From IMG/VR virus record IMGVR_UViG_3300025319_000005, positions 62,001-126,000 of that record: DNA of 64,000 nt; one strand, 5' to 3'. Position 1 is the stretch's first letter, and the number at the start of each line of letters is the position of its first letter. This document shows, one piece after another, positions 15,426-48,311 of this stretch. Made by a program: the position numbers and the translations under genes. The notes under the pieces are model-generated. The model did no database searches and was not told where the DNA came from. It saw nothing but the letters and a program-made list of their open reading frames with translations.

Positions 15426-15524
15426 GATGTTTTAGATTTAGTTGGTTTATAATGTGATACTTTGTTGTTTGCAATGTACTATACCAAAAGAAATTGTATT
15501 GCGTTACAACTTTATTGAACTATG

Positions 15525-15734
15525 TTACACAAATACAATATTATGTTTCTTTGCCCAAGACTTAGCACGTTGTTCTGCCTTATCTATTTCAGAAGTAAAG
15601 CATTTAATAAATCCCCAAGCCTGTCCTACTGGAACAATTCTTGACCGTTGAACATTCCACATTCCACCTCTCCAATGAATATAATCAGTAAGAAGGTAAT
15701 ACTTTTGAACTTTGATTTCTGTTTTCGTTTCCAT
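15525..15734 (-). CDS. hypothetical protein (likely leaderless)
   Basis: ATG directly follows motif. Confidence 0.7.
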   Translation of the reverse strand: METKTEIKVQKYYLLTDYIHWRGGMWNVQRSRIVPVGQAWGFIKCFTSEIDKAEQRAKSWAKKHNIVFV

Positions 15735-15839
15735 AATGTACTATACAAAAAAGAATTTAATCGCGTTACAGAAATATTAGAATAGTTGGCGGATGTTTCT
15801 GGAGGAGAAGCCCGTCCAGTAAGGATTTAAACAGATTTT

Positions 15840-15921
15840 GATATACGTAAAATCCAATTAAATTCCTGTCACGAAAAGAATTTAATTAGTGACAGGATTT
15901 CGGATTTATATTTCGTATATC
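15840..15921. repeat. Nested palindromic element copy 4
   Basis: Same architecture; central spacer in reverse orientation. Confidence 0.95.
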
Positions 15922-15960
15922 TATTTTAAAATAAAATTCATCAGCTGGTCGCCGGCTCCT

Positions 15961-16050
15961 GGGATTTTTCGGGATTTTTCGGGATTTGTCAGGATTCGTC
16001 GGGATTTTTCGGGATTCGTCGGGATTTTACGGGATTCATCAGGATTTTAC
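15961..16050. repeat. Tandem 10-bp repeat x9 (consensus GGGATTTTTC)
   Basis: gggatttttc gggatttttc gggatttgtc aggattcgtc gggatttttc gggattcgtc gggattttac gggattcatc aggattttac. Confidence 0.95.
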
Positions 16051-16287
16051 CAAAAACAAAAAAGCCACACATTTCTGCATGGCTCTTTAAATAAAATTTG
16101 CTCAACTTATAACTACGCTTGATTCCCCTTAATTGTTGTGACTCGTTCGGGTATTGTATCTGGTTTCAATGCGTTTATATTTATTTGTGTATCTGTTGCT
16201 TGGATAAATTCTTTTTTAAGGTCAGCCCAAAATCCAATTCTTTCAATTTCTAACATAATATGTTTTTTTAAATAAATATGATTGATT

Positions 16288-16503
16288 TTAACGTGTATAA
16301 ATTAAACCATCATTTTTTGCCTTAAGACGTTCTTTCATGCTTCCATCTTTCTTTAGACATTCTTCAACTGGAAAATCCCGATAATGTGTTGCGCCTTCTC
16401 CAAACTTAATTTCCAATGCCGTTGGCTTTCTATGGTACGTTAATTCTTTTATATTCCTTTCTGCAAAAATTTCTTTGTCGGTAGGAAGTGCTTTCTTTTT
16501 CAT
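16288..16503 (-). CDS. hypothetical protein
   Basis: ATGA overlap with upstream ORF. Confidence 0.7.
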   Translation of the reverse strand: MKKKALPTDKEIFAERNIKELTYHRKPTALEIKFGEGATHYRDFPVEECLKKDGSMKERLKAKNDGLIYTR

Positions 16504-16730
16504 TTGCTTTGGTTTTTTAAATCGTCAGGAAGTCCAACACCATCAAAATTATAATTTCCTTTTTTACATTCTGCAAGTTCAGCATCACACGCTTCTCTGT
16601 ATTTCGGATGCAGTTTTTCTTTATCTATACAAGAGATACATAAAATTTCTCTGTTGAACATAGACATTTTTGTAATGTTATTGGTGGGTTCATTACACCT
16701 ATCGCAGATACCTTTTACTTTCTCGTCCAT
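16500..16730 (-). CDS. small putative Zn-binding protein
   Basis: CDRC...CISC. Confidence 0.7.
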   Translation of the reverse strand: MDEKVKGICDRCNEPTNNITKMSMFNREILCISCIDKEKLHPKYREACDAELAECKKGNYNFDGVGLPDDLKNQSK

Positions 16731-16811
16731 GACATTTTATTTTGGTTATAATGTACTATACAAAAAATTAAATTGTTGCGTTACAACTTCGTTGGGTTTC
16801 ACCACAGATTT

Positions 16812-17222
16812 TTACCCTACCTGTTTTACTTTACCACACTCTTTGCAAATCCAATGATGTTTATCGCACACTTCTGATACACCATCATCAACGTATATAG
16901 CCTTAGTATCACACTCACATTTACACCAAAAATCATCGCTTTCTTCATTTATCTCTTCGATTTGTTCTTTAGCATCGCGTTCCTTTTGTAAATTTTTAAT
17001 AACTTTCCCATCACGAACTTCAAGCGGCCATCCGTATTTAATAAAATCTTTCCCTTTAATGTTTGTTTCATTGGTTCTACGAACTCCTTTTTTGTGAGTT
17101 ATGTTATCTCTTGTCCGAGAATGTGAGCCGGAAGTTTCGCCAAAGTGTTTTTTGTCTTTATGCTTTTTGCGGTCTTTAGCAGTGTACTCTTCTCCCTTAT
17201 ATTTTTTTTTTGTCTTGCTCAT
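16812..17222 (-). CDS. basic protein with C-terminal Cys/His cluster
   Basis: WCKCEC...CDKHHWICKECG. Confidence 0.7.
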   Translation of the reverse strand: MSKTKKKYKGEEYTAKDRKKHKDKKHFGETSGSHSRTRDNITHKKGVRRTNETNIKGKDFIKYGWPLEVRDGKVIKNLQKERDAKEQIEEINEESDDFWCKCECDTKAIYVDDGVSEVCDKHHWICKECGKVKQVG

Positions 17223-17313
17223 TTGATTTCAGTTTTACCATTAATGTTAATTACAATGTACTATACGAACTTTAATTCTTTTGCGTTACAACTTCGTTGA
17301 ACTTCGTTACAAG

Positions 17314-17577
17314 TTATACCATTTCTTCCACATTTGCACCTAATTCTGCTAATACATTTGAAACGCTAATCATTCTTACTGTGTCTGTTTCAGAAATACA
17401 CTCGGTGTCAATTTTGTGATAAGCAACTTCAAGAAGGGTTCCGATTTCATCTACATGGTCTTCTTCTACATACAAAGACGCTGATTCCTTCATTTGAATT
17501 CTTTCAGCTTCATTGCTCGTAAAGTAGTCAATAAAATTCTCAATTATCATTAACTTAAATTCATCTGTTTTTTTCAT
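17314..17577 (-). CDS. acidic hypothetical protein
   Basis: ORF track. Confidence 0.65.
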   Translation of the reverse strand: MKKTDEFKLMIIENFIDYFTSNEAERIQMKESASLYVEEDHVDEIGTLLEVAYHKIDTECISETDTVRMISVSNVLAELGANVEEMV

Positions 17578-17808
17578 GGCTTTATTGTTTGGTTGATTAA
17601 TTTTTACTTCTCCAGATTTTTATTGCATCTTTTATAGAGTAAAACAAAAATTTTTTCCCTTGAATGTTAACAACTCCATTACTGTATTTATAAGCATAAA
17701 CGCCATTTCTAACTTTTGTTTTACTGATTGGGGTTGCGAATAAGTCAGGTTGCATTTGCTTTTAAGTTTTGGTTTGTAATGTACTATACAAAATTAAATA
17801 ATATTACG

Positions 17809-18006
17809 TTACACTTTGCCACAATTCTTTAATTCAGTTTCAGTAGCTATTTTGAATAACTCCCAAAACTGTTTGCTTTCCAATAAACACAACTGAATAA
17901 CACCAAATAACTCCAACATGGTTTTCCGATTATCTCTTTCATTCCATTCTAAAAGATAATAATAACATCGTGCAGGAACTTCTATATCATCTAAGCATTT
18001 TTTCAT
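17809..18006 (-). CDS. hypothetical protein
   Basis: Stop in TGTAAC. Confidence 0.6.
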   Translation of the reverse strand: MKKCLDDIEVPARCYYYLLEWNERDNRKTMLELFGVIQLCLLESKQFWELFKIATETELKNCGKV

Positions 18007-18185
18007 AATGTACTGCCGTTAGGCGTATGTTATTTATAACGTACTATACGAAAAAGAATTGAGCCATGTTACACGTTACGGGTGCGTTTAGGATTTTACA
18101 ACAATTAATTGCATCTAACGGATGGCGGATATACGCAGTTTTGCAGCGTTTTGCAGCGAAAATTTAAGTGATTTTAAAACTAAAA

Positions 18186-18267
18186 GATATACGTAAAATC
18201 CAATTCAATTTGTGTCACGAATTTAATTCTTTTCGTGACATAATCTCATTTTTATATTTCGTATATC
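18186..18267. repeat. Nested palindromic element copy 5
   Basis: Same architecture. Confidence 0.95.
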
Positions 18268-18632
18268 AAAATCAAAGTAAAATTCCACTGCGGAGCCTCC
18301 AGGAAATCTAAAGTTCCGGTGCTTCAGAACTTTGGGCATCAGGATTTTACCACAAAACAAAAACCCCAACATTTCTGCCGGGGCTTTTTTATTAATCTTT
18401 TATCTAATATATAAGTAATCATTATTATAAATTACCTCTTGGGGGCATCTCTTGTCCGATTCATCTCGTCTGAGTTTAAGGGTTAATACTAATTAACGCG
18501 AATAATGTGTTTAGCTACCAATTCAGCTACAATTACGCTGTTTATTTTTTGTATTGCTTGGTCTATTGTAAGTCCTAAAAGCAACCATTGTTTTAAGTCC
18601 ATGTGATTTAATATTAAAGTTAACGTTTGAGT

Positions 18633-18785
18633 TTATAAATTGCGATTTCCACAAGTACAACAATATTTTGCTATCATTAACCTGTTAGTTTTGCAATGAT
18701 TACAGTAGTGGTTGATTTTTGCTACAACGTATTTTACTTCTGCATTGACAACTTTTGATTTGGATTTTATTTCTGTCGTTTCCAT
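18633..18785 (-). CDS. small Zn-ribbon protein
   Basis: METTEIK...CNHC...CCTCG; start reassigned. Confidence 0.6.
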   Translation of the reverse strand: METTEIKSKSKVVNAEVKYVVAKINHYCNHCKTNRLMIAKYCCTCGNRNL

Positions 18786-18876
18786 GACTTTAAGTTTTGG
18801 TTTGTAATGTACTGCCTTCGGCGGCGTTCTTAACGCACTATACCAAAAGAAATTGTATTGTGTTACAAAAACGGAG

Positions 18877-19122
18877 TTAATCCCAATCTTTTGCAAGTTC
18901 AATGTTTTCTATTAATGTTGAATTACTTTTTAACCATTGGATAGGTTCAGGACAGTTTGGAGTTTGATCGATTACTGCAACACCATAGTATTTATTGGAT
19001 TTCCAAATTTCTTTTGCTTGGTCAACTGCAGTCTTAAATGGAAGTCCAGTTGCAACTGGAACTGCTCCATGCACATCGCTTTTAAATGTGGCTATTTCAA
19101 ATTTTGTTGTGGCGTTTTTCAT
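18877..19122 (-). CDS. hypothetical protein
   Basis: Operon. Confidence 0.7.
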   Translation of the reverse strand: MKNATTKFEIATFKSDVHGAVPVATGLPFKTAVDQAKEIWKSNKYYGVAVIDQTPNCPEPIQWLKSNSTLIENIELAKDWD

Positions 19123-19139
19123 GGTTGGTTGTTTTTTGT

Positions 19140-19478
19140 TTAAAATTTATAGTCAGCAATCTTTTCAATTTTTTCATCCAATAGATTAAAAATTTCATCT
19201 ATATAAATTTCATTAAAAATCTGCTGTATTGTTCCTTGCGTAGAAGTTAAATAAATATCAAAGGCATCCATAAAATTAAGATAAATATAAACATGACCTT
19301 TGTGGTGATGCCCATTAACTTTGAAACGCAAAGCTGATTCAGTCATTTTAGTAAAGCCATGAGCTCCCCAAGACCAAAATTTTGCTTTATGGGCATAAAG
19401 AAAATCTACAATCTCTTTATGATCCATTATTCTCCCCTCCCTTAATCCTTCAATATTTATTTTTTCTCCGATTTTCAT
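19140..19478 (-). CDS. phage hypothetical protein
   Basis: FWSWGA...FKVNGHHHKGHVYI; motif upstream. Confidence 0.75.
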   Translation of the reverse strand: MKIGEKINIEGLREGRIMDHKEIVDFLYAHKAKFWSWGAHGFTKMTESALRFKVNGHHHKGHVYIYLNFMDAFDIYLTSTQGTIQQIFNEIYIDEIFNLLDEKIEKIADYKF

Positions 19479-19528
19479 GGTTGGTTATTTTGGTTATAAT
19501 GGACTATACGAATTTTAATTCTTTCGTG

Positions 19529-19933
19529 TTACAAATCTCCTTTAATTCCAAGTTTATCTTTCCGCTCCTTTGCCATTTCTTCCAGTTTTAATTGAAAACT
19601 ACTTTTTTTCTTGGGAAGCATCCAACCGTCTGTTTGTACTGGTGCAGAAGTAGCAGAATTTTCCTTTAAAAGACGCCTATTATCTTTGTATCTGCCACTT
19701 TTAGGGAGAATTATATTTAAAATTCCTAATGCAATAATAGATGCAAGCATAGTAAGTAAAATCACAATTCCACTTGTATAAACAATCATTACTATAACAA
19801 GTATGATTTTGATTAATCCAAGCCATTCAGTTTGTGGTATCGCGTTTATAATTAGGTCATACAACAGAGTATCTAAATATATGACAAACCAAGCGCAAAG
19901 ACCTACGATAATAATTTTTAATAATGTGTTCAT
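19529..19933 (-). CDS. membrane protein
   Basis: 2-3 hydrophobic segments; stop in TGTAAC. Confidence 0.75.
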   Translation of the reverse strand: MNTLLKIIIVGLCAWFVIYLDTLLYDLIINAIPQTEWLGLIKIILVIVMIVYTSGIVILLTMLASIIALGILNIILPKSGRYKDNRRLLKENSATSAPVQTDGWMLPKKKSSFQLKLEEMAKERKDKLGIKGDL

Positions 19934-19945
19934 GTTTTTTTGGTT

Positions 19946-20239
19946 TTAAGGTTTGATTTCTATTTGTTTTGTGTTTCCGTTCCAATCTCCAATTCTCCCC
20001 TCCCATACCCTTCCGTTATATGATACGTGAGCGATGATTTTATTGTTTTCATCGAGTATCTCCCCGCCACTCCAGTTACCACTCCCCAAATCATTATTAT
20101 CAATAAAATCTCGACAAACATCACTTGCTTCTTTGAAAGACGTTACGGTAACAACTTTATTCTTTTCAGAGCCGTATAATCTTTGATTTGGATTTTGACC
20201 GAAGTCGGGATTTCCTACTGAACTTAATTTGACTTTCAT
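19946..20239 (-). CDS. phage hypothetical protein
   Basis: GNPDFGQ...GNWSGG...VSYNGRVW; motif upstream. Confidence 0.75.
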   Translation of the reverse strand: MKVKLSSVGNPDFGQNPNQRLYGSEKNKVVTVTSFKEASDVCRDFIDNNDLGSGNWSGGEILDENNKIIAHVSYNGRVWEGRIGDWNGNTKQIEIKP

Positions 20240-20291
20240 GGAATATGGTTTTTGGTTTGTAGTGTACTATACCAATTTTAATTTAAGGGTG

Positions 20292-20561
20292 TTACAGATA
20301 TAATCCAATTTCTTTAATGTCCTTTTTCATTTGTTTTTCAAATGAAGTGCCCGAAACATCATATTGTTCAGACTCATCATTAAGAATTGCTACTACAATT
20401 GCTTTCGGAATAAGCATTGGATTGGAATTTGGACTCCAAGCATCAATGTCTATTGCTCCACAATTAAGAGCTTTATCAACTTTTTTCTTCGCTTGTTCAA
20501 AACTTTCTTTTAACATTTGAACTGCCAACTTTTTGATTTGAGATTTCTTTTTATTTGTCAT
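20292..20561 (-). CDS. hypothetical protein
   Basis: Stop in TGTAAC. Confidence 0.7.
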   Translation of the reverse strand: MTNKKKSQIKKLAVQMLKESFEQAKKKVDKALNCGAIDIDAWSPNSNPMLIPKAIVVAILNDESEQYDVSGTSFEKQMKKDIKEIGLYL

Positions 20562-20567
20562 GATTTT

Positions 20568-20924
20568 TTATTTAGTTTGATAAACAATTTGGTGTACTGT
20601 TCTAACTTTACCGCTTTCGAGGATTTTACTTGAACTTTCTTCTACGAAAAACACTTTGTTTTTGAACGCTTGTTTCATTAAGTTTGCTTTTTGTCTTGCT
20701 TTGCCGATTGGAACAATACCTTTTGTCCTATCACATTTATAAGTATCAATAGGTTCTCTTTGACCACTTACTTCGTTATTGTGAGTTGAAAATATTTTAT
20801 AATCTAAAGGAACAAGTATAAAATTTTCTTCTTCAACTACTTCAATGCTTTTTGTAATATTCAAATCACATATCACATCTAAGTTCAAACTATCTAAATC
20901 TCCAAATATGTCATCAATTTCCAT
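20568..20924 (-). CDS. hypothetical protein
   Basis: Motif upstream. Confidence 0.7.
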   Translation of the reverse strand: MEIDDIFGDLDSLNLDVICDLNITKSIEVVEEENFILVPLDYKIFSTHNNEVSGQREPIDTYKCDRTKGIVPIGKARQKANLMKQAFKNKVFFVEESSSKILESGKVRTVHQIVYQTK

Positions 20925-20975
20925 AGCTTTAAGTTGTTGGTTATAATGTACTATACCAAAAAAAATTGGATTGCG

Positions 20976-21212
20976 TTACATATCAGTTAAACATAAATGA
21001 GAATTTTTAGACAAAACGTCCTTATAAAACTCCTGCTTTTCAACAATTTCCTGTTCAACTGTTTTTTCAGCTTCCCATATATCTATTTTTTTTGTTTGAT
21101 AGTAAGAAAGTTTCCAACATTTGCGGATTCCTTTAATTGCTTCTTTTTTGTTATTAGCATTAATGCTATAACAATTTGCACTTTCTGATAAATAATACTT
21201 ATATCTTTTCAT
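20976..21212 (-). CDS. hypothetical protein filling exactly the space between two motifs
   Basis: ATG follows motif, TAA in next TGTAAC. Confidence 0.75.
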   Translation of the reverse strand: MKRYKYYLSESANCYSINANNKKEAIKGIRKCWKLSYYQTKKIDIWEAEKTVEQEIVEKQEFYKDVLSKNSHLCLTDM

Positions 21213-21336
21213 AATGTACTATACAAGAAAAAAACGAATTTCGTTACAACTTCGTTGGGTTACACCACAAATATCCGTGCATAAAAACTGGGACTCCAGC
21301 CGGCGTACATCTCTGGCGTAAAAATCCTAAATATTT

Positions 21337-21418
21337 GATATACGTAAAATCCAATTCAATTTCTGTCACGAATTAATTTATTTTTGTGACAGGATTTCAC
21401 TTTTATATTTCGTATATC
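21337..21418. repeat. Nested palindromic element copy 6
   Basis: Same architecture. Confidence 0.95.
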
Positions 21419-21603
21419 CTTATCCGGTAAAATCCTCTAGCTGGCCACCGCCTGGGGAATTTTTTTCAAGCTCTTACTTTGGGCATCAGGATTTTACACA
21501 AAACAAAAAGCCCCAACATTTCTGTTGAGGCCTTTGTCAATAAGTTCACTCCGTATTACTCCGCAGTGCCTATTCGAGGAAAATGGTGCGCCATATCCCT
21601 ATA

Positions 21604-21858
21604 TTAAAAAAACTTAATTTCTGATTTTGGAAAATTATATTTAATACCTTGAACAATAGTTAAGTGAATAACCGCATAATCTCCATTCATATACTCTATA
21701 AGCTGTCCTACTTTTATGGCTGGACAACCAATAGTATTAACACGAAATAAATCCCATCTGTTGTTTATTTGTCCGAAATTATCTTCTTGTGTAGTTGGTT
21801 TACTCGCACAATTAAATTCATTATTTTGTATTTTTACAACTTTTTTATCTGTGTTCAT
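21604..21858 (-). CDS. hypothetical protein
   Basis: Motif upstream. Confidence 0.7.
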   Translation of the reverse strand: MNTDKKVVKIQNNEFNCASKPTTQEDNFGQINNRWDLFRVNTIGCPAIKVGQLIEYMNGDYAVIHLTIVQGIKYNFPKSEIKFF

Positions 21859-21928
21859 GGCTTTGGGTTTTGTTATGTCGTACTATACAAAAGAAATTAA
21901 AACTACGTTACAACTCCGTTGAACTTTG

Positions 21929-22210
21929 TTACACATAAAACGCTTTAACACTCATATTAAAATATTTAATTTTTGATACAGGTTCAAACAAATCATTAAT
22001 GATTATTTTATCTACAATAGGAATAGATTTGATTTTCAGACTCGTACTTTCTCCATAGGCTTCGATTTCTACTTCTCTACGCATTATCTTTACATTTACA
22101 AACCCTGCTGAATACACTTTTTTAAAACCTTTAGCTACTTGTTTGTGAATTGTGTTTTCATTAAATAATATAGCACCGCTGTCAGTAATTATGTATTTGA
22201 ATATTGGCAT
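21929..22210 (-). CDS. phage hypothetical protein
   Basis: H...SAGF...YGESTSL pattern. Confidence 0.7.
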   Translation of the reverse strand: MPIFKYIITDSGAILFNENTIHKQVAKGFKKVYSAGFVNVKIMRREVEIEAYGESTSLKIKSIPIVDKIIINDLFEPVSKIKYFNMSVKAFYV

Positions 22211-22220
22211 AGATACACTC

Positions 22221-22415
22221 TTAATTCATTGAATATTTTATATGGGTTTCTGGATATAGATTTTTATCACCTAACCACACATACAAAACTATCCACGAAG
22301 GGAATTTCTTTAATTCATAATTTAAAATAGGTTGAAAGCATTTCAAATTAGCCCTCATGTCTAACCATTCATTTTCAATATAACCTCTGAATTTTATGTT
22401 TTTATTTTCCATCAC
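22221..22415 (-). CDS. hypothetical protein
   Basis: Motif upstream. Confidence 0.65.
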   Translation of the reverse strand: MMENKNIKFRGYIENEWLDMRANLKCFQPILNYELKKFPSWIVLYVWLGDKNLYPETHIKYSMN

Positions 22416-22461
22416 TTAAATGTTGGTTGTAATGTACTATACGAAAAAGAATAGAGCTATG

Positions 22462-22647
22462 TTACAACTCATCATCTTTAGATTTGTGTTTTGTTTTTCT
22501 ACTATGTTTAGTTCCGCTACACATATAACAGCTACAAGGCTTACCCTGCTCTTTATATTCATAGTGTTCTTTAGGATTTAAGCCTAATTCGTTACACCTC
22601 TTCTTCTGTTTTAGTTTAGATATCTCTTGTCGTCTTGCCTTATTCAT
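22462..22647 (-). CDS. small basic Cys-cluster protein
   Basis: PCSCYMC; stop in TGTAAC; start reassigned. Confidence 0.65.
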   Translation of the reverse strand: MNKARRQEISKLKQKKRCNELGLNPKEHYEYKEQGKPCSCYMCSGTKHSRKTKHKSKDDEL

Positions 22648-22795
22648 TATCGTTTTTAGATTTTTTACGGTTGTACTTTGTTTTGTCTTTAAAAGTTTTA
22701 GGCATAAACCTACCATCGTATGCACCAGCTTCTTTCATAGCTTCACGCTTACGTTCTAATATTAAGGATTTTACGGTACGTTTTTTCTTTGCCAT
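22640..22795 (-). CDS. small basic protein
   Basis: GAYDGRF...KDKTKYNRK; start reassigned. Confidence 0.6.
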   Translation of the reverse strand: MAKKKRTVKSLILERKREAMKEAGAYDGRFMPKTFKDKTKYNRKKSKNDNE

Positions 22796-22805
22796 TATGA
22801 TTTGA

Positions 22806-23042
22806 TTAATTTGCACAAAGTTTATCTTGGTCTTTAACACTTATTTTTATTCCAGTACTCAACATTTGCTTATAAGAGTTAATAATATCTCTTTGATTTT
22901 CTATCGTTTGTCTTTGAAATTCTGATGAACTTTCTTTAAGGTAGTACGCTTTTCTCCAATTAATAACATTTTTAATCAAACGAACAATAAGAAGCATTGC
23001 CATTCCTAATAAAATTGCGAGTATCATTGTGGTTGTTGTCAT
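22806..23042 (-). CDS. single-pass membrane protein
   Basis: Hydrophobic N-terminus; motif upstream. Confidence 0.7.
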   Translation of the reverse strand: MTTTTMILAILLGMAMLLIVRLIKNVINWRKAYYLKESSSEFQRQTIENQRDIINSYKQMLSTGIKISVKDQDKLCAN

Positions 23043-23173
23043 AGTTTTAAATTATTGGTTATTGTACTATACAAATATAAATAGTATTACGTTACGAAAA
23101 ATCAGAATAACATGGCGGATGTTTCTGGAGAAGCCCGTCGCCGGCGAGTTCTGGAGCTATTTTTGATTTATTA

Positions 23174-23255
23174 GATATACGTTTAATCAAAGCCAATTTG
23201 TGTCACGAAAAGAATTTAATTAGTGACAGGATTTCGGGTTTAAATTTCGTATATC
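23174..23255. repeat. Nested palindromic element copy 7
   Basis: Same architecture; alternative left arm, reversed central spacer. Confidence 0.95.
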
Positions 23256-23424
23256 TAAATTAAAAGAAAAATCCTGTTCTGGAGCCTCCTGGCCGGATTT
23301 CCTTCAGCTTCAGTTTCTTGCGGTGAATGGGTTAGTTTAACTCCGCAAAAGTGCGTCGAACAGAAAACAAAAAACCCCCGCATTTCTGCAAAGGGCTTTC
23401 TGAACCAACCAATAAATTAAAAAG

Positions 23425-23497
23425 TGGAAAGGGTAGGAATTGAACCCACGACACGAGTGCTTTCGACACCCTGCTCTACCAACTGAGCTACCTCACC
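23425..23497 (-). tRNA. tRNA-Phe(GAA), non-canonical C33
   Basis: GGTGAGG TA GCTC AGTTGGTA GAGC A GGGTG TCGAAAG CACTC GTGTC GTGGG TTCAATT CCTAC CCTTTCC A. Confidence 0.85.
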
Positions 23498-23664
23498 ATA
23501 GTTTCGTTCTTCCTGATGTTAGGCATTTATACTCAAGCATCTTCCCCGAACGACAAAGGCTTGAGATTTTCTTTAATGGCGCATGATTTCTAAGTTTTAG
23601 TGAGTCGTTATCTCGTTAATAATGTTGCTTTAGAATGTACTATACGAATTTTAATTCTTTGGTG

Positions 23665-23901
23665 TTACAATTTTATTTCTTTTTCAGTTCCGCAAATAGC
23701 ACAGGTGCTTCTTTTTGGATCAGAAATAGTTGGAGTTTCAGCATCGCATAGAATACATTTATGATAAGCCAATTTAACTTTATTAGCATAATCATAAACT
23801 GCTGTTGCTCCAGTTGCAGTATATAACTTTTCACATATCTCTCTTGTTACATTAGCTAAACTCTCTCTAAGAAATTTCGGTTTTTGTGGTTTCCTTGCCA
23901 T
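23665..23901 (-). CDS. Zn-ribbon protein
   Basis: CILC...CAICG; stop in TGTAAC. Confidence 0.7.
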   Translation of the reverse strand: MARKPQKPKFLRESLANVTREICEKLYTATGATAVYDYANKVKLAYHKCILCDAETPTISDPKRSTCAICGTEKEIKL

Positions 23902-24059
23902 AGCGTTATAATTTGTTTTTAATCAGCCTACCACTTGTTGTCTTTAGTGCCTCGACATCTTTTGACCAATTTTATTGGCTCGATTTCTCTGCTGATAATG
24001 TACTATACAAAATTAAATCGGATTGCGTTACAAAAAGAATATAATAGGGAGAGTTTATT

Positions 24060-41399: not shown

Positions 41400-41723
41400 A
41401 TGAAAAAAGTATTATTAGTTATTGTTGCATTTTCGTTGTCGAATTGCGACATAAGCGTTAGAAAAACAAACGCACAATCAGAAATATTTTATCAGACTTA
41501 CACAAGAGAAATAGTAGAATTCGATGGAATGAAATATTTACTTTTATATGTTGTTAATAAATCATCGCAAACCGGATATTCAATAACGACAATTAACCTA
41601 ACAAAAGACAAGTTAGAAGTTGAATTATTACGGCACCAATTGACAGTCGTTAATTGTATATTCAATATCCAATTTGTTTTTTACCAACTTATTACTATAA
41701 ACGGTTCTGACCACATAAGATAA
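41400..41723 (+). CDS. putative lipoprotein
   Basis: MKKVLLVIVAFSLSNC; 3' end overlaps convergent cytolysin-like gene. Confidence 0.6.
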   Translation: MKKVLLVIVAFSLSNCDISVRKTNAQSEIFYQTYTREIVEFDGMKYLLLYVVNKSSQTGYSITTINLTKDKLEVELLRHQLTVVNCIFNIQFVFYQLITINGSDHIR

Positions 41724-42749
41724 TGGAACCCCTGTTTTAAGGTCAGATGATTGACCTAATAAAGTAGTTAAAGAGCTTAAAGAATTGCTGTTAATTGCTG
41801 AAAAAGTACTGGTAGTACTACCTCCAAGTGCAATTACTTTAATTGACAAATTTTCTAATGTAGATAAATAATTCGCATCAATATTTCCAGATACCGGTAT
41901 ACCATCAAAAGAAACATTAATTGCAGCTGTTATTTCTTCTTTTGAAGAAGTAGATTCAATGAGTAGATAAAATACACGTCCATAAGTTACATCTGATACA
42001 TAACATGCCGGATTATCTTTGCCAACATACTTAGCAAGATCCATAGGTTTAACGGTTGGGTCAAAGAAATCATCATATGATGGTGGTATATCATAACTCA
42101 TAGTAAAAAATGTTTGTTTTAATTCTACCAAATAATGATTTGCTGTTGAATTATTTAAAAAAGACAAATTAGCAACTATAGTTACCGGTGAAATTTCAAC
42201 ATTTAATCCAAGTGCTAATGATAATTCTTCATTCGTTTTAACTAACTCATGATTAAAAGTAAATCTTGCCGGCATAACTTTATTGTTACTAAAAATAATA
42301 TTATTTAATGCTTGTGTAACTACGCTTTTTTTAATTTCATTTAAATTCACATACACAGAGCCGGAACCATTAATAATATCAATAGACACTGTTCCTCCAC
42401 CACGTTTTACTGCAATAACATCTGGAGTTGCATTATTTAAAGAAGCTCCTTGTAATAAACTTCCAGGATAAACTACTGATACGTTAGGGTCATATAATGG
42501 ATAATACATATTTCCTTGCAAAACACTCCAAGTACTATTTGTACAATTCCAATTACCACTATCAACAGGTACTGAAGTTGTATTTACATCAATAAGATTT
42601 TTATAATCACTAAATGGAGCAAATTCACCTCCTGATTTTAAAACTTCTTCATATGATACATTTTCACTTGGTGATACGTCTTTTTTACAAGAGTTTAAAG
42701 TGATTAAAGTAATAAACATTAGACTGATAAAATAAAAGTGTTTTTTCAT
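41628..42749 (-). CDS. thiol-activated/cholesterol-dependent cytolysin-like (CDCL) lipoprotein lacking domain 4
   Basis: Lipobox LNSCKKD; VYPGSLLQG, YVSDVTYGRVFY, IALGG and GVPLSY motifs of CDC domains 1-3; no undecapeptide. Confidence 0.85.
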   Translation of the reverse strand: MKKHFYFISLMFITLITLNSCKKDVSPSENVSYEEVLKSGGEFAPFSDYKNLIDVNTTSVPVDSGNWNCTNSTWSVLQGNMYYPLYDPNVSVVYPGSLLQGASLNNATPDVIAVKRGGGTVSIDIINGSGSVYVNLNEIKKSVVTQALNNIIFSNNKVMPARFTFNHELVKTNEELSLALGLNVEISPVTIVANLSFLNNSTANHYLVELKQTFFTMSYDIPPSYDDFFDPTVKPMDLAKYVGKDNPACYVSDVTYGRVFYLLIESTSSKEEITAAINVSFDGIPVSGNIDANYLSTLENLSIKVIALGGSTTSTFSAINSNSLSSLTTLLGQSSDLKTGVPLSYVVRTVYSNKLVKNKLDIEYTINDCQLVP

Positions 42750-43286: not shown

Positions 43287-44084
43287 ATGAAATTAAAATT
43301 AAACACTCTATTAGCTAAGACAGACCACTTAGCTACGTCTTACAAAAACTCTATTAAAGATTACATTGGTTTCTTCAAAGATAAACAATCCGCTTTTAAA
43401 GGCGAGAAGAAAACTTATGATCCAAAATCAGGGACAATCGACATTCCTTCTGAAAGAGGAAATAAAATGGTTGTTACAACCGTAAAAGAAAAGCTTGACT
43501 GGTTAAAAGAAACCAATACCGAATATATTAATGCGTTATTTTCTCAGGAAGCTACAAACGCAAATGGATTAGCTAAAGCGAAACTTGCAATTGACGGAAT
43601 TGAATTCGGAGAATTTTCTTCTCTTGAGCTTTTGCGTTTGAAATCTCTTATTGAAAACGGTGAGCTTGAACAAATGTATGCCAACATTCCAGTTCGTGCT
43701 GACGATGAAGAATGGAATAAAACAGATGAAGACCAATACGTAGAAAGAGAAATCTTTGAAGGTAAGAAACAAGAAGGGATTAAAAAATCCATCACAAAAG
43801 AAAGTTATATACTTTCTGACCCCAACATCAAAGAATTAAAAGATTCTTCTTCTTATAAGCCACAAATGGCTTCTAAAGACACTATTATTGAACTTGGGGA
43901 TTATTCTTATCAAAAATTTTCCGGTGAATGGTCTCACAGAGAAAGAGCAGAATTGCTTCGCAGAAGAACAAAACTTTTGAGTGCTGTAATTGAAGCGTTG
44001 AAAATTGCAAATGAAGCAGAAGTAATTAATTCAAATATGACTGCAGATAAGTTGTTCAATTTTTTACATACCGGTAAAATTTAA
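43287..44084 (+). CDS. conserved-looking hypothetical protein upstream of ncRNA locus
   Basis: 265-aa helical/coiled-coil protein MKLKLNTLLAK...KFSGEW...ALKIANEAEV. Confidence 0.85.
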   Translation: MKLKLNTLLAKTDHLATSYKNSIKDYIGFFKDKQSAFKGEKKTYDPKSGTIDIPSERGNKMVVTTVKEKLDWLKETNTEYINALFSQEATNANGLAKAKLAIDGIEFGEFSSLELLRLKSLIENGELEQMYANIPVRADDEEWNKTDEDQYVEREIFEGKKQEGIKKSITKESYILSDPNIKELKDSSSYKPQMASKDTIIELGDYSYQKFSGEWSHRERAELLRRRTKLLSAVIEALKIANEAEVINSNMTADKLFNFLHTGKI

Positions 44085-44090
44085 AAACTA

Positions 44091-44270
44091 ATGGACAAAG
44101 ATAAACTTAATTGGGGATTGATTTCTTGGGTGTTGTATTCAATTAGTGCGTATGTTTTACTAATACCATTTTTTGAATATTCCTTAAAAACACTGAGTGG
44201 TTCCATAATATTAGGTTTTTTCGGAAGTTTATTAAACATCATAATACAGTTATTAAATAAAAAAAATTAA
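44091..44270 (+). CDS. small membrane protein (59 aa, not in ORF track)
   Basis: MDKDKLNWGLISWVLY... two hydrophobic segments. Confidence 0.6.
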   Translation: MDKDKLNWGLISWVLYSISAYVLLIPFFEYSLKTLSGSIILGFFGSLLNIIIQLLNKKN

Positions 44271-44384
44271 ACGTTCACTGCTGGAAGTTACAATATGTCG
44301 TACGTAACAGTTGCAAATTGAGTTAAATGGTTCCAGCGCCTCAAGGTGAACACTTATTAAAATCGTTCTTTAAAATATTTAAAA

Positions 44385-44665
44385 TACTGACGGAGCGTGA
44401 ACTTCATAATTAGCCTTACATTTAAAATTGCGGTTTTAATGTTGAGTCAGAAGCTTCATAATCATGTTAAAAACGAATAGAAAATCAAGTAAAAAAGCAA
44501 GAAACTGGTGGTTCGAATCCACTCCCATCCTCTTTAAAAACAAAAAACAAGGACGGGCAGTTTGAGCGGGGAAACGCTTGTTAAATAAACTATAAACTTG
44601 GTTAATTTCTATTCATACATTTTCAGTAATGTACAGCCCCGGAGCTAGGATATATGCTACGGGGC
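44385..44665 (+). ncRNA. structured ncRNA with circularly permuted tRNA-like domain (YrlA/Y-RNA-like topology)
   Basis: T arm GGTGG-TTCGAAT-CCACT and acceptor 3' strand CCCATCC precede acceptor 5' strand GGACGGG and D arm GTTT..AAAC; closed by GCAAG/CTTGT, ATCAAGT/ACTTGGT, GAATAGAAA/TTTCTATTC, TACTGA/TCAGTA. Confidence 0.75.
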
Positions 44666-44669
44666 ATTT

Positions 44670-44771
44670 GGGAAAATACGAGAATTGGTATATCGGCTAT
44701 GAAAAAGAAATCCGCAAAGCTTTTTTTAGTGACCGAAAGGTGTAGGGGTTCGATGCCCTTTTTTCCCACCA
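44670..44771 (+). tRNA. aberrant class-II tRNA-like gene with elongated anticodon arm, ends ACCA
   Basis: GGGAAAA/TTTTCCC acceptor, GAATTGGTATA D loop, ACC-GAAA-GGT variable arm, TTCGATG T loop; anticodon not assignable. Confidence 0.65.
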
Positions 44772-44775
44772 AATA

Positions 44776-45180
44776 ATGAACACAGAAGAACAAGAAATAA
44801 TAAAAGAATTCTCAATTCTTGAAGATTGGATGGAAAAATACGACCATCTTATCAAACTTGGAAAATCCATGAAAACCATGGATGAAAATAATAAAATCGA
44901 TGAAAATTTAATTAAAGGATGCCAGAGCCGAGTTTGGTTGCATTCTGAATTTTTGAATGACAAAGTTATTTTCACTGCGGATAGTGATACTACAATTACA
45001 AAAGGAATGGTTTCAATGCTGGTAAGAGTTTTTTCTAACCGGACCGCATTAGAAATTATAAATGGTAATCTTGATTTTATTTCCGAAATAGGATTAATGC
45101 AACACATTTCACCAACCAGGAGCAATGGTTTAGTTAGTATGTTCAAACAAATGAAGAACGACGCTCGTGAATTTATTTAA
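44776..45180 (+). CDS. sufE: SufE-family sulfur acceptor protein
   Basis: DWMEKYDHLI, IKGCQSRVWL, ADSD, HISPTRSNGL. Confidence 0.95.
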   Translation: MNTEEQEIIKEFSILEDWMEKYDHLIKLGKSMKTMDENNKIDENLIKGCQSRVWLHSEFLNDKVIFTADSDTTITKGMVSMLVRVFSNRTALEIINGNLDFISEIGLMQHISPTRSNGLVSMFKQMKNDAREFI

Positions 45181-47213: not shown

Positions 47214-47664
47214 TATTTTCTAATTTTTCAGTCAAAACTTTTCTTTCTAAAGAAACACCTCCCATATTTTCTATTTTCACAATAAGAGCATTTGCATTTA
47301 AAATAATTTCTTCCAACTCTTCAAGTTTTTTTATTATAGATTCACAATAAAGTTTATACGCCAAAAAAGGACTGTCATATTTTTCAACATTACTATTTGG
47401 AGCAGTCCAAAATAAGGGGCAAGATTTCTCGCCAGAAAAATCCATTGCAAAAAAACTATTATCAGCAGAGAAAAAAAGTATTTTATTATTGCTTGTTATA
47501 CGAAATTCTTTCAAACCTTTAACTTCTTCACATTTAGCTTCTTCAATTCCAAGCCTATTTAATGCATTAATTATTCTTGGATAAATTTGCTGAGCCATCA
47601 ATTCAGCTAAATATATATTTTTAGGGTCGCTTCTATATAATTTATTTTGTAAATCTGTAGCCAT
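47206..47664 (-). CDS. hypothetical protein with C-terminal RKVLTEK
   Basis: ORF track. Confidence 0.7.
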   Translation of the reverse strand: MATDLQNKLYRSDPKNIYLAELMAQQIYPRIINALNRLGIEEAKCEEVKGLKEFRITSNNKILFFSADNSFFAMDFSGEKSCPLFWTAPNSNVEKYDSPFLAYKLYCESIIKKLEELEEIILNANALIVKIENMGGVSLERKVLTEKLENNG

Positions 47665-48311
47665 TATTTAGAAAGTTCTTTTAACTTGTTTTCTAATTCA
47701 ATTTTAAATGTAAGATATTTTTCTCGGAAGTATTCCCATTCTGTTTCATCACATTCGTTTATTTCTTTATGAAGATAATTTGCAGCTGTAAAATCCACTA
47801 TTTTTCCATATTCCATAATTTGGATTGCAAAAATAAGCATTTTAAGTGAATGAAATATACTTTTTAATGCACGATATATATCCCCTTCATTAAGTTTATG
47901 TTTTCCACCTCTCCAGCTGTTAAATGATTGAGCTATAATATTTTTAGCAAGCTTCTTTTTGTTTAAAACAAATTTCAAACTTTCTTTTTCCTGGAACCTT
48001 GCCCATGTCGGAGAAAAGAAACACTCAAGGTTCATGATGTCATGATTTTCTAAATCACGTTTGAATTTATCCGGAGTAATAACATGAATATTGAGACGAC
48101 AATTATCTATTTCTGCTGTCATTTCGTTATGTTCTAATAGTGCAGCTCCAATAATTATAATATCGTAATCAGAATCTACTCTATTGTTAGAGTATACTCT
48201 TGATCCATATAAAAATATGTTTCTTATTTTAATAGGATGAATTCCGGCTTTTTCTATGATTTCTGCAACCGTAAATGGAATATCAAATATTGTACGTGTT
48301 GTTGTGTTCAT
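47664..48311 (-). CDS. pol-beta-superfamily nucleotidyltransferase domain protein
   Basis: FLYGSRVY...DSDYD followed by helical domain. Confidence 0.85.
   Translation of the reverse strand: MNTTTRTIFDIPFTVAEIIEKAGIHPIKIRNIFLYGSRVYSNNRVDSDYDIIIIGAALLEHNEMTAEIDNCRLNIHVITPDKFKRDLENHDIMNLECFFSPTWARFQEKESLKFVLNKKKLAKNIIAQSFNSWRGGKHKLNEGDIYRALKSIFHSLKMLIFAIQIMEYGKIVDFTAANYLHKEINECDETEWEYFREKYLTFKIELENKLKELSK

What the first reader, a model, noticed from the sequence alone, without database searches (positions are those of the whole stretch)
43287..44665. Protein gene followed by an ncRNA with a circularly permuted tRNA domain and a codon-periodic loop
Seen: the tRNA 3' half (44496-44531) precedes the 5' half (44550-44582), joined by an A-rich loop closing the acceptor stem. 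The anticodon stem continues into a long helix closed by TACTGA/TCAGTA, followed by a GC hairpin (44636-44665). The enclosed unpaired 5' segment shows 6-nt periodicity (agcgtg aacttc ataatt agcctt acattt aaaatt ... agcttc ataatc atgtta). Known: this topology matches YrlA Y RNAs, which normally sit beside Ro60/Rsr; no Rsr is in this window. Inference: a possibly undescribed ribonucleoprotein of the 265-aa protein and a tRNA mimic, perhaps with a tmRNA-like template segment.
Basis: partly seen in the sequence, partly recalled or inferred. Interest (0 to 1): 0.85.

Follow-up and report, generated by a model that had tools for sequence, protein, structure and literature searches.

The report
Phage permuted-tRNA RNA beside DUF7873
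Next to an uncharacterised phage protein lies a conserved, undescribed RNA built around a tRNA with its halves in swapped order, periodic six-base repeats and a dedicated partner tRNA; it recurs in phages of four bacterial groups, including cultured ones, so it can be tested directly.

Summary
Window 44386-44771 (+) encodes a multi-domain RNA system that follows a DUF7873 gene in about 80 of 90 related loci. In the reverse test, all 12 true instances found from an RNA pattern alone follow a DUF7873-like gene.

Shown by covariation:
- a 5' hairpin carrying in-register A-g-c-n-U-n hexamers;
- a canonical but circularly permuted tRNA (T arm, then an acceptor stem closed by a spacer of 16 nt or more, then the D arm; the anticodon loop is opened);
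- a long-range helix, GAATAGAAA/TTTCTATTC;
- a GC hairpin that is terminator-like in relatives;
One of its loops is complementary to the apex of the 5' hairpin and changes with it, even where it is encoded behind an ORF.

It fails the tested defining features of YrlA (no Ro-binding motif, no Rsr nearby, no Rfam hit) and of tmRNA (no G3.U70, U73, repeats not codon-like).

Best reading, inferred: a new phage ribonucleoprotein that mimics tRNA, is cut by tRNA-processing enzymes, and uses the hexamers as a periodic protein-binding track. No expression data could be obtained. Function is unknown.

The parts
43287..44084 (+). DUF7873 gene (265 aa), the conserved upstream partner of the RNA
   Evidence: Pfam PF25283, E 6e-38. 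623 homologues and 844 clusters at 50% identity. AF2 model pLDDT 82 with no structural relative at E<1e-3.
44091..44270 (+). 59-aa ORF (hydrophobic). This ORF and the hairpin-rich spacer after it (44271-44385) are peculiar to this locus and separate the DUF7873 gene from the RNA.
   Evidence: ORF list. In most relatives the RNA starts within about 10 nt of the DUF7873 stop codon.
44386..44450 (+). 5' hairpin domain. P1 stem: CTGAC 44387-44391 with GTCAG 44446-44450. Apical stem-loop 44418-44442 with apex loop UUGCGG 44428-44433. Conserved 3'-arm motif UUAAUGUUG 44436-44444 (family consensus UUAGUGUUG).
   Evidence: Coordinates. P1 differs on both sides between clades; 75% of loci have 5 bp or more with their own partner, against 32% when strands are swapped between loci. 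The motif is found with 2 or fewer mismatches in 59 of 60 loci.
44394..44429 (+). Hexamer run 1 (AGCGUG AACUUC AUAAUU AGCCUU ACAUUU AAAAUU). The last two units lie in the apical stem.
   Evidence: Period-6 statistics. Aligned columns show A and U invariant every 6 nt.
44452..44469 (+). Hexamer run 2 (AGCUUC AUAAUC AUGUUA), directly 3' of P1
44475..44483 (+). 5' strand of the long-range helix P-ext (GAAUAGAAA), which pairs with 44606-44614
   Evidence: Found as the longest within-locus complement. Compensatory changes in the window clade. 48% of loci have 9 bp or more with their own partner, against 15% when swapped.
44496..44582 (+). Circularly permuted tRNA. Anticodon-stem 3' strand 44496-44501, variable loop, T arm 44507-44523, acceptor 3' strand 44524-44530, U73-C74 44531-44532, A-rich spacer up to 44550, acceptor 5' strand 44551-44557, D arm 44560-44575, anticodon-stem 5' strand 44577-44582.
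   Evidence: The covariance model R1 scores 67.8 bits here (the window sequence is in the seed) and 40-89 bits in relatives that were not in the seed.
44606..44614 (+). 3' strand of P-ext (UUUCUAUUC)
44617..44632 (+).
   Evidence: RNAalifold with AU-to-GC exchanges
44636..44665 (+). GC hairpin with a conserved loop (family consensus GAAGGAUAUUGA; here GAGCUAGGAUAUAUGCUAC). It is followed by a U tract in many relatives.
   Evidence: Covariation. Loop motif and U tracts seen.
44670..44771 (+). Partner tRNA-like RNA ('tRNA2'): 7-8 bp acceptor stem, D arm, a long arm with the 12-nt loop AAAUCCGCAAAG (44708-44719), a short extra hairpin, T arm 44744-44759, A73 and an encoded CCA. CCGCAA is complementary to the apex loop UUGCGG.
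   Evidence: Weak tRNA-Sec hit only (19.5 bits); ARAGORN finds nothing. Covarying stems. Loop-loop complementarity across the family.

Best explanation
Window 44386-44771 encodes a previously undescribed phage RNA system that is inherited together with the DUF7873 protein gene.

SHOWN
- A core RNA of about 280 nt made of five parts:
  - a 5' hairpin (P1) whose 5' arm and 3' flank carry 7-8 hexamers A-g-c-n-U-n in one register;
  - a canonical tRNA fold with permuted strand order and the anticodon loop opened;
  - a helix (P-ext) that continues the anticodon stem beyond an internal loop;
  - a small hairpin;
  - a GC hairpin with a conserved loop, which is terminator-like in relatives.
- A separate tRNA-like partner, tRNA2. 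One of its loops is complementary to the apex loop of the 5' hairpin and changes with it. The partner loop is the anticodon loop in short versions and an extra-arm loop in long ones.
- The complementarity also holds in loci where tRNA2 lies 300-800 nt away, behind a terminator-like hairpin and an ORF. The pairing can therefore act in trans.

INFERRED
- Host RNase P, RNase Z or 3' exonucleases, and the CCA-adding enzyme cut at both tRNA-like modules. This removes the variable spacer that closes the acceptor stem. The result is a multi-piece RNA held together by the acceptor, anticodon and P-ext helices, as in two-piece tmRNA and M. smegmatis YrlA.
- The assembled RNA displays two tRNA 'top halves' (acceptor stem plus T arm).
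- The unpaired hexamer tracks are a periodic binding platform, one unit per subunit, for an oligomeric protein. That protein is most likely DUF7873, made from the same transcript.
- The resulting ribonucleoprotein mimics tRNA to bind or divert a host or phage enzyme that handles tRNA.

Which enzyme, and to what end, is not known.
For: Linkage
- A T loop lies at +120 to +170 nt after the DUF7873 stop codon in most of 90 unique loci.
- The full permuted tRNA is found in 72 of 90 loci by script and in about 78 sources at 48 bits or more by the covariance model.
- Three apparent misses have a UUUGA variant of the T loop.
- Reverse test: of 29 hits to an RNA-only pattern, 12 are true instances. All 12 follow a DUF7873(-like) gene; the other 17 are ordinary tRNAs.
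- The pair persists in distant homologues (L148, L149). It is also present in isolates: Vibrio phage D505, Arthrobacter phage Racecar and Rhizobium phage RHph_Y65, where it sits inside tRNA clusters.

Structure
- (94.9% paired, 267 double-change cells).
- (95 pairs, 49 with compensatory change in the window clade).
- (P1 and P-ext, own partner against swapped partner).

Loop-loop pairing
- At least 20 different complementary loop pairs at constant positions. Examples: UUGCGG/CCGCAA, CCUCUAUC/GAUAGAGG, UCUCGGU/ACCGAGA, GCUAGA/UCUAGC, CCUUGGC/GCCAAGG.
- 43 of 58 loci have a complement of 6 nt or more, against 27 expected (z = 4.4).
- It is kept where tRNA2 is distant.

Processing
- Both modules keep the 7-bp acceptor plus 5-bp T stem, the T loop and the GG D loop.
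- C follows the discriminator in all 60 loci (the U at 73 was a condition of the script, but both columns are also invariant in alignment A3).
- The closing spacer is 16-169 nt long, never shorter.
- M. smegmatis YrlA, which also has a 7-bp acceptor stem, is cut by RNase P in vitro and is cleaved and receives CCA in vivo (PMC4201824).

Hexamers as a protein track
- Period 6 with no period 3.
- A1 and U5 are invariant, while the rest of the unit differs between lineages (AGCnUn, AAACUn, AGCCUU).
Against:
- DUF7873 has no recognisable RNA-binding fold and no structural relative. By eye its sequence is rich in both Lys and Glu rather than clearly basic.
- Lak megaphages carry DUF7873 with no RNA directly downstream, and about 5 of 90 loci lack it there. 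The protein can therefore exist without an adjacent RNA.
- Parts of the hexamer tracks can also pair with each other or with the UUAGUGUUG motif, so they may not be single-stranded.
- The statistical excess for the loop-loop pairing is moderate because the sequences are AT-rich.
Confidence: 0.45

Rival explanations
1. A processing and stability cassette with no dedicated ribonucleoprotein. The tRNA-like modules act as punctuation for RNase P and RNase Z. They define the 3' end of the DUF7873 mRNA, protect it, and release tRNA2 or downstream tRNAs. DUF7873 is only a syntenic neighbour inside phage tRNA clusters.
For: - The RNA begins at or within about 10 nt of the stop codon and ends in a terminator-like hairpin.
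- In isolates the locus sits inside tRNA gene clusters.
- tRNA-like punctuation is an established principle (mitochondrial transcripts, MALAT1-mascRNA; from general knowledge).
Against: - It does not explain the hexamer register, the invariant UUAGUGUUG motif, the conserved GC-hairpin loop, or a covarying loop-loop match with a tRNA-like RNA that can be encoded elsewhere.
- A normal tRNA would punctuate as well as a permuted one.
- The linkage to DUF7873 survives divergence to 23-26% identity across four host groups, while the other neighbours change.
Confidence: 0.2
2. A self-assembling RNA scaffold.
For: - The two complementary loops lie far apart and can act in trans.
- Many loop sequences are near-palindromic (CUAG core).
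- The best, though weak, Foldseek matches of DUF7873 among viral models are phi29-type collar proteins (E 0.03-0.13).
Against: - The fold matches are not significant (TM 0.13-0.2).
- No Rfam hit to ROOL, GOLLD or pRNA.
- Nothing tested here tells intra-complex from inter-complex pairing.
Confidence: 0.1
3. A divergent two-piece (permuted) tmRNA that is aminoacylated and whose repeats, or the stretch after the anticodon stem, encode a short Ala/Leu-rich tag.
For: - The gene order (3' tRNA half, spacer, 5' tRNA half) is that of permuted tmRNA genes (PMC11915505).
- Read as GCN-UNA, many arrays give ALAL...A-stop. The segment after the anticodon stem reads A-L-A-stop in several loci.
- A phage-encoded tmRNA without a coding sequence, which inhibits host tmRNA, is on record (phage DS6A, cited in PMC11915505).
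Against: - ARAGORN finds no tmRNA. No Rfam tmRNA model, permuted ones included, matches even at E<=10.
- The 3:70 pair is never G.U, and the discriminator is U, not A.
- The module has a full D arm and anticodon stem.
- The hexamers conserve positions 1, 2, 3 and 5 and show no period 3. C at the would-be wobble position of AGC is kept in an AT-rich genome. The GCN-UNA frame has stops inside the arrays. The window itself reads GCG-UGA.
- SmpB was not looked for among short ORFs.
Confidence: 0.08
4. A true YrlA-type Y RNA whose Ro60/Rsr partner is encoded elsewhere in the 212-kb genome or supplied by the host.
For: - Same module order and a closed acceptor stem (PMC4201824).
- A few jumbo phages encode TROVE proteins (PMC7824862).
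Against: - GNCGAAN0-1G is absent from the window RNA and present in only 4 of 60 5' domains, at non-homologous places.
- No TROVE domain among the 24 window ORFs of 170 aa or more, nor in the gene lists of L117, L148 and L149.
- YrlA genes lie within 4 kb of rsr on the same strand (PMC4201824); here the constant neighbour is DUF7873.
- No Rfam hit.
Confidence: 0.07
5. Chance resemblance, decayed tRNA genes, or the junction of two tandem tRNA genes.
For: The covariance model also gives 20-45-bit hits at junctions of ordinary tandem tRNAs. The YrlA authors warn of this false positive (PMC4201824).
Against: - No 5' tRNA half lies upstream of the T arm and no 3' half lies downstream of the D arm.
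- The two acceptor strands pair with each other and covary.
- True members score 48-89 bits (42-47 bits in the distant isolates) and keep all flanking domains.
Confidence: 0.01

Closest known systems
YrlA (bacterial Y RNA) with Ro60/Rsr
   Same: - A tRNA-like module in the order T arm, acceptor-like stem closed by a loop, D arm, with the anticodon side opening into the rest of the RNA.
- Encoded next to its protein partner.
- The M. smegmatis member, with a 7-bp acceptor stem, is cut by RNase P and receives CCA (PMC4201824).
   Different: - The constant neighbour is DUF7873, not a TROVE protein.
- No GNCGAAN0-1G motif and no Rfam hit.
- Extra domains: hexamer arrays, P-ext, a GC hairpin with a conserved loop.
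- A dedicated partner tRNA-like RNA bound by loop-loop pairing.
Two-piece (circularly permuted) tmRNA
   Same: A permuted gene order whose transcript is cut by tRNA-processing enzymes into pieces held together by base pairing. The spacer between the acceptor strands is variable (PMC11915505).
   Different: - No G3.U70 or A73 alanine identity.
- A full D arm and anticodon stem are present.
- No pseudoknots were identified.
- The repeats are not codon-like.
- Not detected by ARAGORN or the Rfam tmRNA models.
T-box leader bound to tRNA (and other anticodon-loop kissing complexes)
   Same: A structured RNA recognises a specific tRNA-shaped partner by base pairing with its anticodon loop. In the short tRNA2 versions, 6-8 nt of the anticodon loop pair with the hairpin apex.
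   Different: - The pairing is longer than a codon.
- The partner is a dedicated phage RNA whose 'anticodon' drifts freely.
- No antiterminator or T-box bulge was identified.
- The downstream genes are not conserved.
- The comparison rests on general knowledge, not on a test.
Periodic protein-RNA assemblies: TRAP on (G/U)AG repeats; Cas7 backbones with a 6-nt register
   Same: Short units repeated every 5-6 nt in unpaired RNA, about 9-10 units in all, with only some positions of each unit specified.
   Different: - DUF7873 shows no sequence or fold relation to TRAP or Cas7. The many Cas7/Csm3 entries among the Foldseek PDB hits all have E of 0.39 or more and TM about 0.1.
- Binding has not been shown.
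- This is an analogy from general knowledge.
phi29 packaging RNA; ROOL/GOLLD RNAs of phages
   Same: Phage-encoded structured RNAs that use covarying loop-loop contacts between molecules. ROOL and GOLLD lie near tRNA genes (general knowledge).
   Different: No sequence or model match. A tRNA fold is the core here. Multimerisation is untested.

Membership tests
YrlA / bacterial Y RNA | tRNA-like module in the order T arm, closed acceptor-like stem, D arm | tested here: met
   definition from PMC4201824
YrlA / bacterial Y RNA | GNCGAAN0-1G (Ro60-binding) motif near the 5' end | tested here: not met
   None in window 44271-44780. Found in 4 of 60 5' domains, at different positions. The same string occurs in the GC-hairpin loop of 7 loci only.
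YrlA / bacterial Y RNA | Encoded within about 4 kb of a Ro60/Rsr (TROVE) gene on the same strand | tested here: not met
   No TROVE hit in 24 window ORFs of 170 aa or more, nor in the precomputed Pfam lists of L117, L148 and L149. The rest of the 212-kb genome is not available.
YrlA / bacterial Y RNA | Physical binding by Ro60 | not testable with these tools
   Needs immunoprecipitation
tmRNA (permuted, two-piece) | Recognised by tmRNA finders and models | tested here: not met
   ARAGORN finds no tmRNA in the window or in 90 loci. No Rfam tmRNA model matches at E<=10. Rfam holds the permuted models RF01849-51 (PMC11915505).
tmRNA (permuted, two-piece) | Alanine identity: G3.U70 and A73 | tested here: not met
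   3:70 is GC, CG, AU or UA (one U.G, one C.A), never G.U. The next base, N74, is C in all 60. N73 = U was a condition of the detection script; U73 and C74 are also invariant columns in alignment A3.
tmRNA (permuted, two-piece) | Tag reading frame with a resume codon and a stop codon | tested here: not met
   No period 3. Conserved hexamer positions are 1, 2, 3 and 5. There are stops inside the arrays in the GCN-UNA frame. The phase is not fixed relative to conserved motifs.
tmRNA (permuted, two-piece) | Permuted gene cut into base-paired pieces by tRNA-processing enzymes | not testable with these tools
   Predicted from the 7-bp acceptor stem, U73-C74 and the spacer of 16 nt or more.
Permuted tRNA genes (algal/archaeal type giving a decoding tRNA) | The ends rejoin to make a normal 7-nt anticodon loop with a conserved U33 and purine 37 | tested here: not met
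   The sequences flanking the 5-bp anticodon stem are not conserved as a loop. They lead into hexamers and P-ext.
Canonical tRNA (for tRNA2) | Cloverleaf with a 7-nt anticodon loop, detectable by tRNA finders | tested here: inconclusive
   Window copy: ARAGORN finds nothing and Rfam gives only tRNA-Sec at 19.5 bits (gathering score 47). Relatives range from 72-nt cloverleaves with odd anticodons, through 150-nt forms with extra arms, to a bare acceptor/T minihelix.
DUF7873 (Pfam PF25283) | Match above Pfam's gathering score over the full length | tested here: met
   131.4 bits against a cut-off of 27, residues 4-261

The most novel reading that the evidence does not exclude
A new class of phage ribonucleoprotein. 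An orphan protein polymerises in a 6-nt register on A-n-n-n-U-n tracks of an RNA scaffold. The scaffold holds two tRNA 'top halves' side by side: one from a permuted tRNA cut into two pieces, the other from a captured partner tRNA-like RNA. This would be a machine built to imitate a pair of tRNAs, for instance to occupy ribosomes, elongation factors, synthetases or anti-phage tRNA nucleases, or to carry out an aminoacyl-transfer reaction of its own. It would be unrelated in sequence and partners to Y RNA, tmRNA and T-box systems.
Probability: 0.3. Interest if true: 0.92.

Novelty: new variant of a known kind. Interest (0 to 1): 0.8.

Why it matters
- tRNA mimics such as tmRNA, Y RNAs and viral tRNA-like structures are few, and each revealed a new way of using the translation or RNA-decay machinery.
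- This one is abundant. DUF7873 has 844 clusters at 50% identity, three quarters of the members with recorded taxa are viral, and it occurs in phages of Bacteroidota, Alpha- and Gammaproteobacteria and Actinomycetota.
- It sits in phage tRNA clusters whose role in countering host defences is under active study. No Rfam 15 family matched it and no paper found here describes it. In deposited genomes it is either left blank or covered by spurious small CDSs.
- Because it is present in cultured phages (Vibrio phage D505 group, Arthrobacter phage Racecar, Rhizobium phage RHph_Y65), its processing, partners and phenotype can be tested directly.
- It would also give a function to a large DUF family. 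It would explain 'odd' phage tRNAs, including apparent amber suppressors that are really kissing-loop partners.

Tried and rejected
- Rfam at gathering and at E<=10: only weak noise, plus tRNA-Sec at 19.5 bits on tRNA2.
- blastn of the locus against phage records: no match.
- PHROGs, PADLOC, PDB by sequence, Foldseek against PDB and BFVD, and the ESM Atlas for DUF7873: no informative relative.
- Stop-codon recoding as the reason for the few long ORFs: no gain from reading TAG or TGA as sense.
- Translational extension of DUF7873 into the repeats: the hexamer phase relative to the ORF is 20/17/5.
- Repeats as a coding tag: rejected on nucleotide-level conservation.
- tRNA2 anticodon loops complementary to the hexamers: seen in about 5 of 10 long forms. 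This is not convincing.
- An automatic hairpin finder for P1 and the apex mis-placed many stems. The MAFFT alignment mis-registers the P1 5' strand. Both were replaced by anchored tests of own partner against swapped partner.
- The 'Pyl/CTA suppressor' calls of ARAGORN are explained by the CUAG kissing motif.
- The possible K-turn reading of the GAAGGAUAUUGA loop is a recollection only and was not tested.
Full report
**What the window is.** The window is AT-rich (about 30% GC) and is 100% identical at this locus to a 212,632-bp IMG/VR viral contig. It holds many short ORFs, two tRNA-Phe genes, a peptide deformylase, SufE and homing-endonuclease-like genes, but no TROVE protein. ORF 43287-44084 is a full-length member of Pfam DUF7873. 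This family has 623 close homologues and 844 clusters at 50% identity, and is mostly viral. An AlphaFold model (pLDDT 82) shows long helices plus beta hairpins and has no significant structural or sequence relative. No paper in the library mentions the family.

**Checking the observation.**
It is canonical in every part except strand order. It has a 5-bp T stem with a UUCGAAU loop, a 7-bp acceptor stem, two linker bases, a 4-bp D stem whose loop contains GG, one base, and a 5-6-bp anticodon stem.
- A script found the same arrangement in 72 of 90 unique loci downstream of DUF7873 homologues.
- On a 38-sequence alignment the four helices pair in 94.9% of cells, against 63% after shuffling and at most 47% when slid. 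Twenty of 21 pairs show compensatory change. One caveat: the seed loci were chosen by a script that demanded pairing in three helices. The anticodon stem was not a criterion, and it still covaries.
- A covariance model built from this alignment scores 48-89 bits just downstream of DUF7873 in about 78 sources, many of them not in the seed. Three of the misses merely have a UUUGA T loop.
- The hexamer periodicity is strong and specific. AGC-AGC distances of 6, 12 and 18 occur 66, 38 and 31 times, against 0-9 at the other lags up to 20. There is no period-3 component.
- In an alignment of 57 5' domains the units fall in fixed columns. A at position 1 and U at position 5 are present in 51-57 of 57 sequences. 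G2 and C3 are common. Positions 4 and 6 are free. There are four units in the 5' arm and three to four after the stem.
- The GC hairpin covaries.
- The TACTGA/TCAGTA closing helix is not supported. CTGAC pairs with GTCAG 55 nt downstream, in a stem that is CCAAC/GTTGG, GACCA/TGGTC, TTGACT/AGTCAA and so on in other clades. TCAGTA is the loop of a small covarying hairpin.
- The helix that does prolong the anticodon stem, beyond an internal loop, is 44475-44483 with 44606-44614.

- Four bases after the GC hairpin starts a second tRNA-like element, 44670-44771: GGGAAAA...UUUUCCC-A-CCA. It has a T arm, a D arm, a long arm with a 12-nt loop and a small extra hairpin.
- Every relative has such a partner, but its body varies a great deal. 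There are 72-78-nt cloverleaves with odd anticodons, 100-165-nt forms with a tRNA-Leu-like D arm and extra arms, and in one distant lineage only an acceptor/T minihelix.
- What stays constant is the acceptor/T 'top half', the A73-C74 end, and one loop complementary to the apex loop of the 5' hairpin.
- The two loops change together. Examples are UUGCGG/CCGCAA (window), CCUCUAUC/GAUAGAGG, CCCAGUC/GACUGGG, UCUCGGU/ACCGAGA, ACUCGGU/ACCGAGU, UCUCGAU/AUCGAGA, GCUAGA/UCUAGC, ACUAGA/UCUAGU, CCUUGGC/GCCAAGG and AAAUGUGGGG/CCCCACAUUU, among others.
- Against random windows of the same loci, 43 of 58 loci have a complement of 6 nt or more where 27 are expected (z = 4.4). The excess is modest because the DNA is AT-rich. 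The constant position and the many different pairs are the stronger argument.
- In short partners the pairing loop is the anticodon loop itself. This explains ARAGORN's 'Pyl/CTA' and undetermined calls.
- In five loci that seemed to lack the partner, the complementary loop sits next to a T arm 300-800 nt further on, behind a U-tract hairpin and an ORF. The contact can therefore work between separate molecules.

**Linkage with the protein.**
- The RNA starts within about 10 nt of the DUF7873 stop codon in most loci, sometimes overlapping it. The window is an exception: a 59-aa ORF and about 115 nt lie in between.
- A search of viral contigs with an RNA-only pattern gave 29 loci. Twelve have the full signature, and all twelve have a DUF7873(-like) gene immediately upstream. 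One was recognisable only through its C-terminal helix by profile comparison. The other 17 are ordinary tRNAs.
- The pair is kept in homologues with profile E-values near 1e-20. It is also kept in deposited isolates with only 23-26% identity to the window protein:
  - Vibrio phage D505 (42.5 bits, under two tiny annotated CDSs, followed by a tRNA);
  - Arthrobacter phage Racecar (two permuted modules in an unannotated 410-nt gap);
  - Rhizobium phage RHph_Y65 (55 bits in a 455-nt gap).
- In all three the gene lies inside a tRNA cluster.
- Their repeats keep A1 and U5 but differ otherwise (AAACUA/AAACUC; AAACUC AGCCUU AAACUU AUCGUG).
- Lak megaphages have the protein (44% identity) without an adjacent RNA.

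**How it most likely works.**
- Shown: the architecture and the co-inheritance.
- Inferred, step 1: both tRNA-like modules are substrates of RNase P, RNase Z or 3' trimming, and the CCA-adding enzyme. They keep precisely the features these enzymes read: a 12-bp acceptor/T stack, the T and D loops, and a discriminator. Both are followed by C74. The spacer that closes the permuted acceptor stem is unstructured, 16-169 nt long, variable in sequence and never reduced to a tight loop. The M. smegmatis YrlA precedent shows that such a closed 7-bp stem is cut by RNase P in vitro and is cleaved and CCA-tailed in vivo (PMC4201824). Permuted tmRNA genes are matured the same way (PMC11915505).
- Inferred, step 2: the pieces stay together through the acceptor, anticodon and P-ext helices and capture tRNA2 by the loop-loop contact. 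The assembly then presents two tRNA top halves.
- Inferred, step 3: the hexamer tracks bind a repeated protein unit. Their conservation is at the nucleotide level, with no period 3, and the unit changes between distant lineages while its A1/U5 frame stays. This fits a co-evolving protein better than a coding or a fixed RNA-pairing role. DUF7873, translated from the same transcript right next to the track, is the obvious candidate, but nothing in its sequence proves it.
- Inferred, step 4: the particle imitates tRNA towards some tRNA-handling machine. I put about 0.45 on this chain as a whole. I put well above 0.9 on the existence of the RNA family and its structure.

**Comparison with known systems.** It works most like YrlA/Ro60 and like two-piece tmRNA, but it fails the defining tests of both.
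- YrlA: no Ro-binding motif, no Rsr neighbour and no model hit.
- tmRNA: no G3.U70 or A73, no tag frame, and no ARAGORN or Rfam tmRNA hit.
- It is not a permuted gene for a decoding tRNA, because no anticodon loop is conserved.
- The anticodon-loop reading recalls T-box leaders. The covarying loop contacts recall phi29 pRNA. The 6-nt register recalls TRAP and Cas7 assemblies. These three are analogies from general knowledge, not tests.

**Limits.** Only 64 kb of the 212-kb genome could be read. SmpB-sized ORFs were not scanned. Whether the hexamers are unpaired is uncertain, since RNAalifold can pair part of run 1 with run 2 and with the UUAGUGUUG motif. The function of the conserved GC-hairpin loop is unknown.

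**Verdict.** This is a real, widespread, undescribed RNA-protein gene pair of phage tRNA clusters. The element is bigger than reported, one proposed helix is wrong, and it belongs neither to the YrlA family nor to the tmRNA family.

Noticed in passing
window 41628-42749 (-): A 373-aa ORF matching the thiol-activated (cholesterol-dependent) cytolysin family (PF01289, E 3e-35), on a phage-like contig just upstream of the DUF7873 gene.
   Followed up: no
window 11046-11119 (-) and 23425-23497 (-): Two different tRNA-Phe(GAA) genes 12 kb apart (60 and 50 bits). The covariance model for the permuted tRNA also gives a weak 29-bit hit at 10993-11082 next to the first one.
   Followed up: no
window 44271-44385: The spacer between the 59-aa ORF and the RNA folds into a long hairpin (about 44273-44351, GTTCACTGCTGGAA...TTCCAGCG...GGTGAAC). 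It is specific to this locus, and its role (terminator of the small ORF?) is unknown.
   Followed up: no
window 44769-44778: The encoded CCA end of tRNA2 (44769-44771) lies only 4 nt before the ATG of sufE (44776). This leaves no room for a separate promoter, so sufE is probably on the same transcript.
   Followed up: no
window 1-64000, especially 13000-24000: Only 5 ORFs of 280 aa or more in 64 kb, and a stretch of about 10 kb without ORFs of 150 codons or more. Reading TAG or TGA as sense does not lengthen ORFs appreciably, so recoding is not the cause.
   Followed up: partly
proteins P0163, P0167, P0175, P0181, P0183, P0184, P0206 and others; L124:2301-3023: Many DUF7873 representatives are half-proteins that start exactly at profile position 131 or end near 122-130. 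In L124 the gene is in two adjacent ORFs. This suggests a recurrent in-frame interruption (stop, frameshift or insertion) at one site.
   Followed up: no
L073:1236-1329; L152:2806-2883 and 2960-3059: Some loci carry two permuted tRNA modules. In L073 a second one follows tRNA2, with CC instead of UC after the acceptor strand. Arthrobacter phage Racecar has two in tandem.
   Followed up: partly
L149:4015-4991: Behind a distant DUF7873 homologue and a 73-aa ORF lies a GC-rich gap of about 1 kb without called genes. It holds a permuted T-arm/acceptor module without a D arm (19 bits). It may be a much larger variant of the RNA.
   Followed up: no
L151:2610-2852 (Vibrio phage D505, OZ195742): Two annotated 'hypothetical protein' CDSs of 44 and 31 aa cover the hexamer region and the permuted tRNA. 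They are probably annotation artefacts.
   Followed up: partly
L117:13140-14675; window 47664-48311 (-): A CCA-adding-enzyme-like gene (PolyA_pol) lies 2.3 kb downstream of the RNA in a related 518-kb phage. A Pol-beta-type nucleotidyltransferase lies 3 kb from it in the window. A possible functional neighbourhood.
   Followed up: no
L150 (Prevotella phage Lak-A1, MK250016) 2001-2783: Lak megaphages encode a DUF7873 homologue (44% identity). It is followed by a plain terminator and an opposite-strand gene, with no permuted tRNA within 2 kb.
   Followed up: partly
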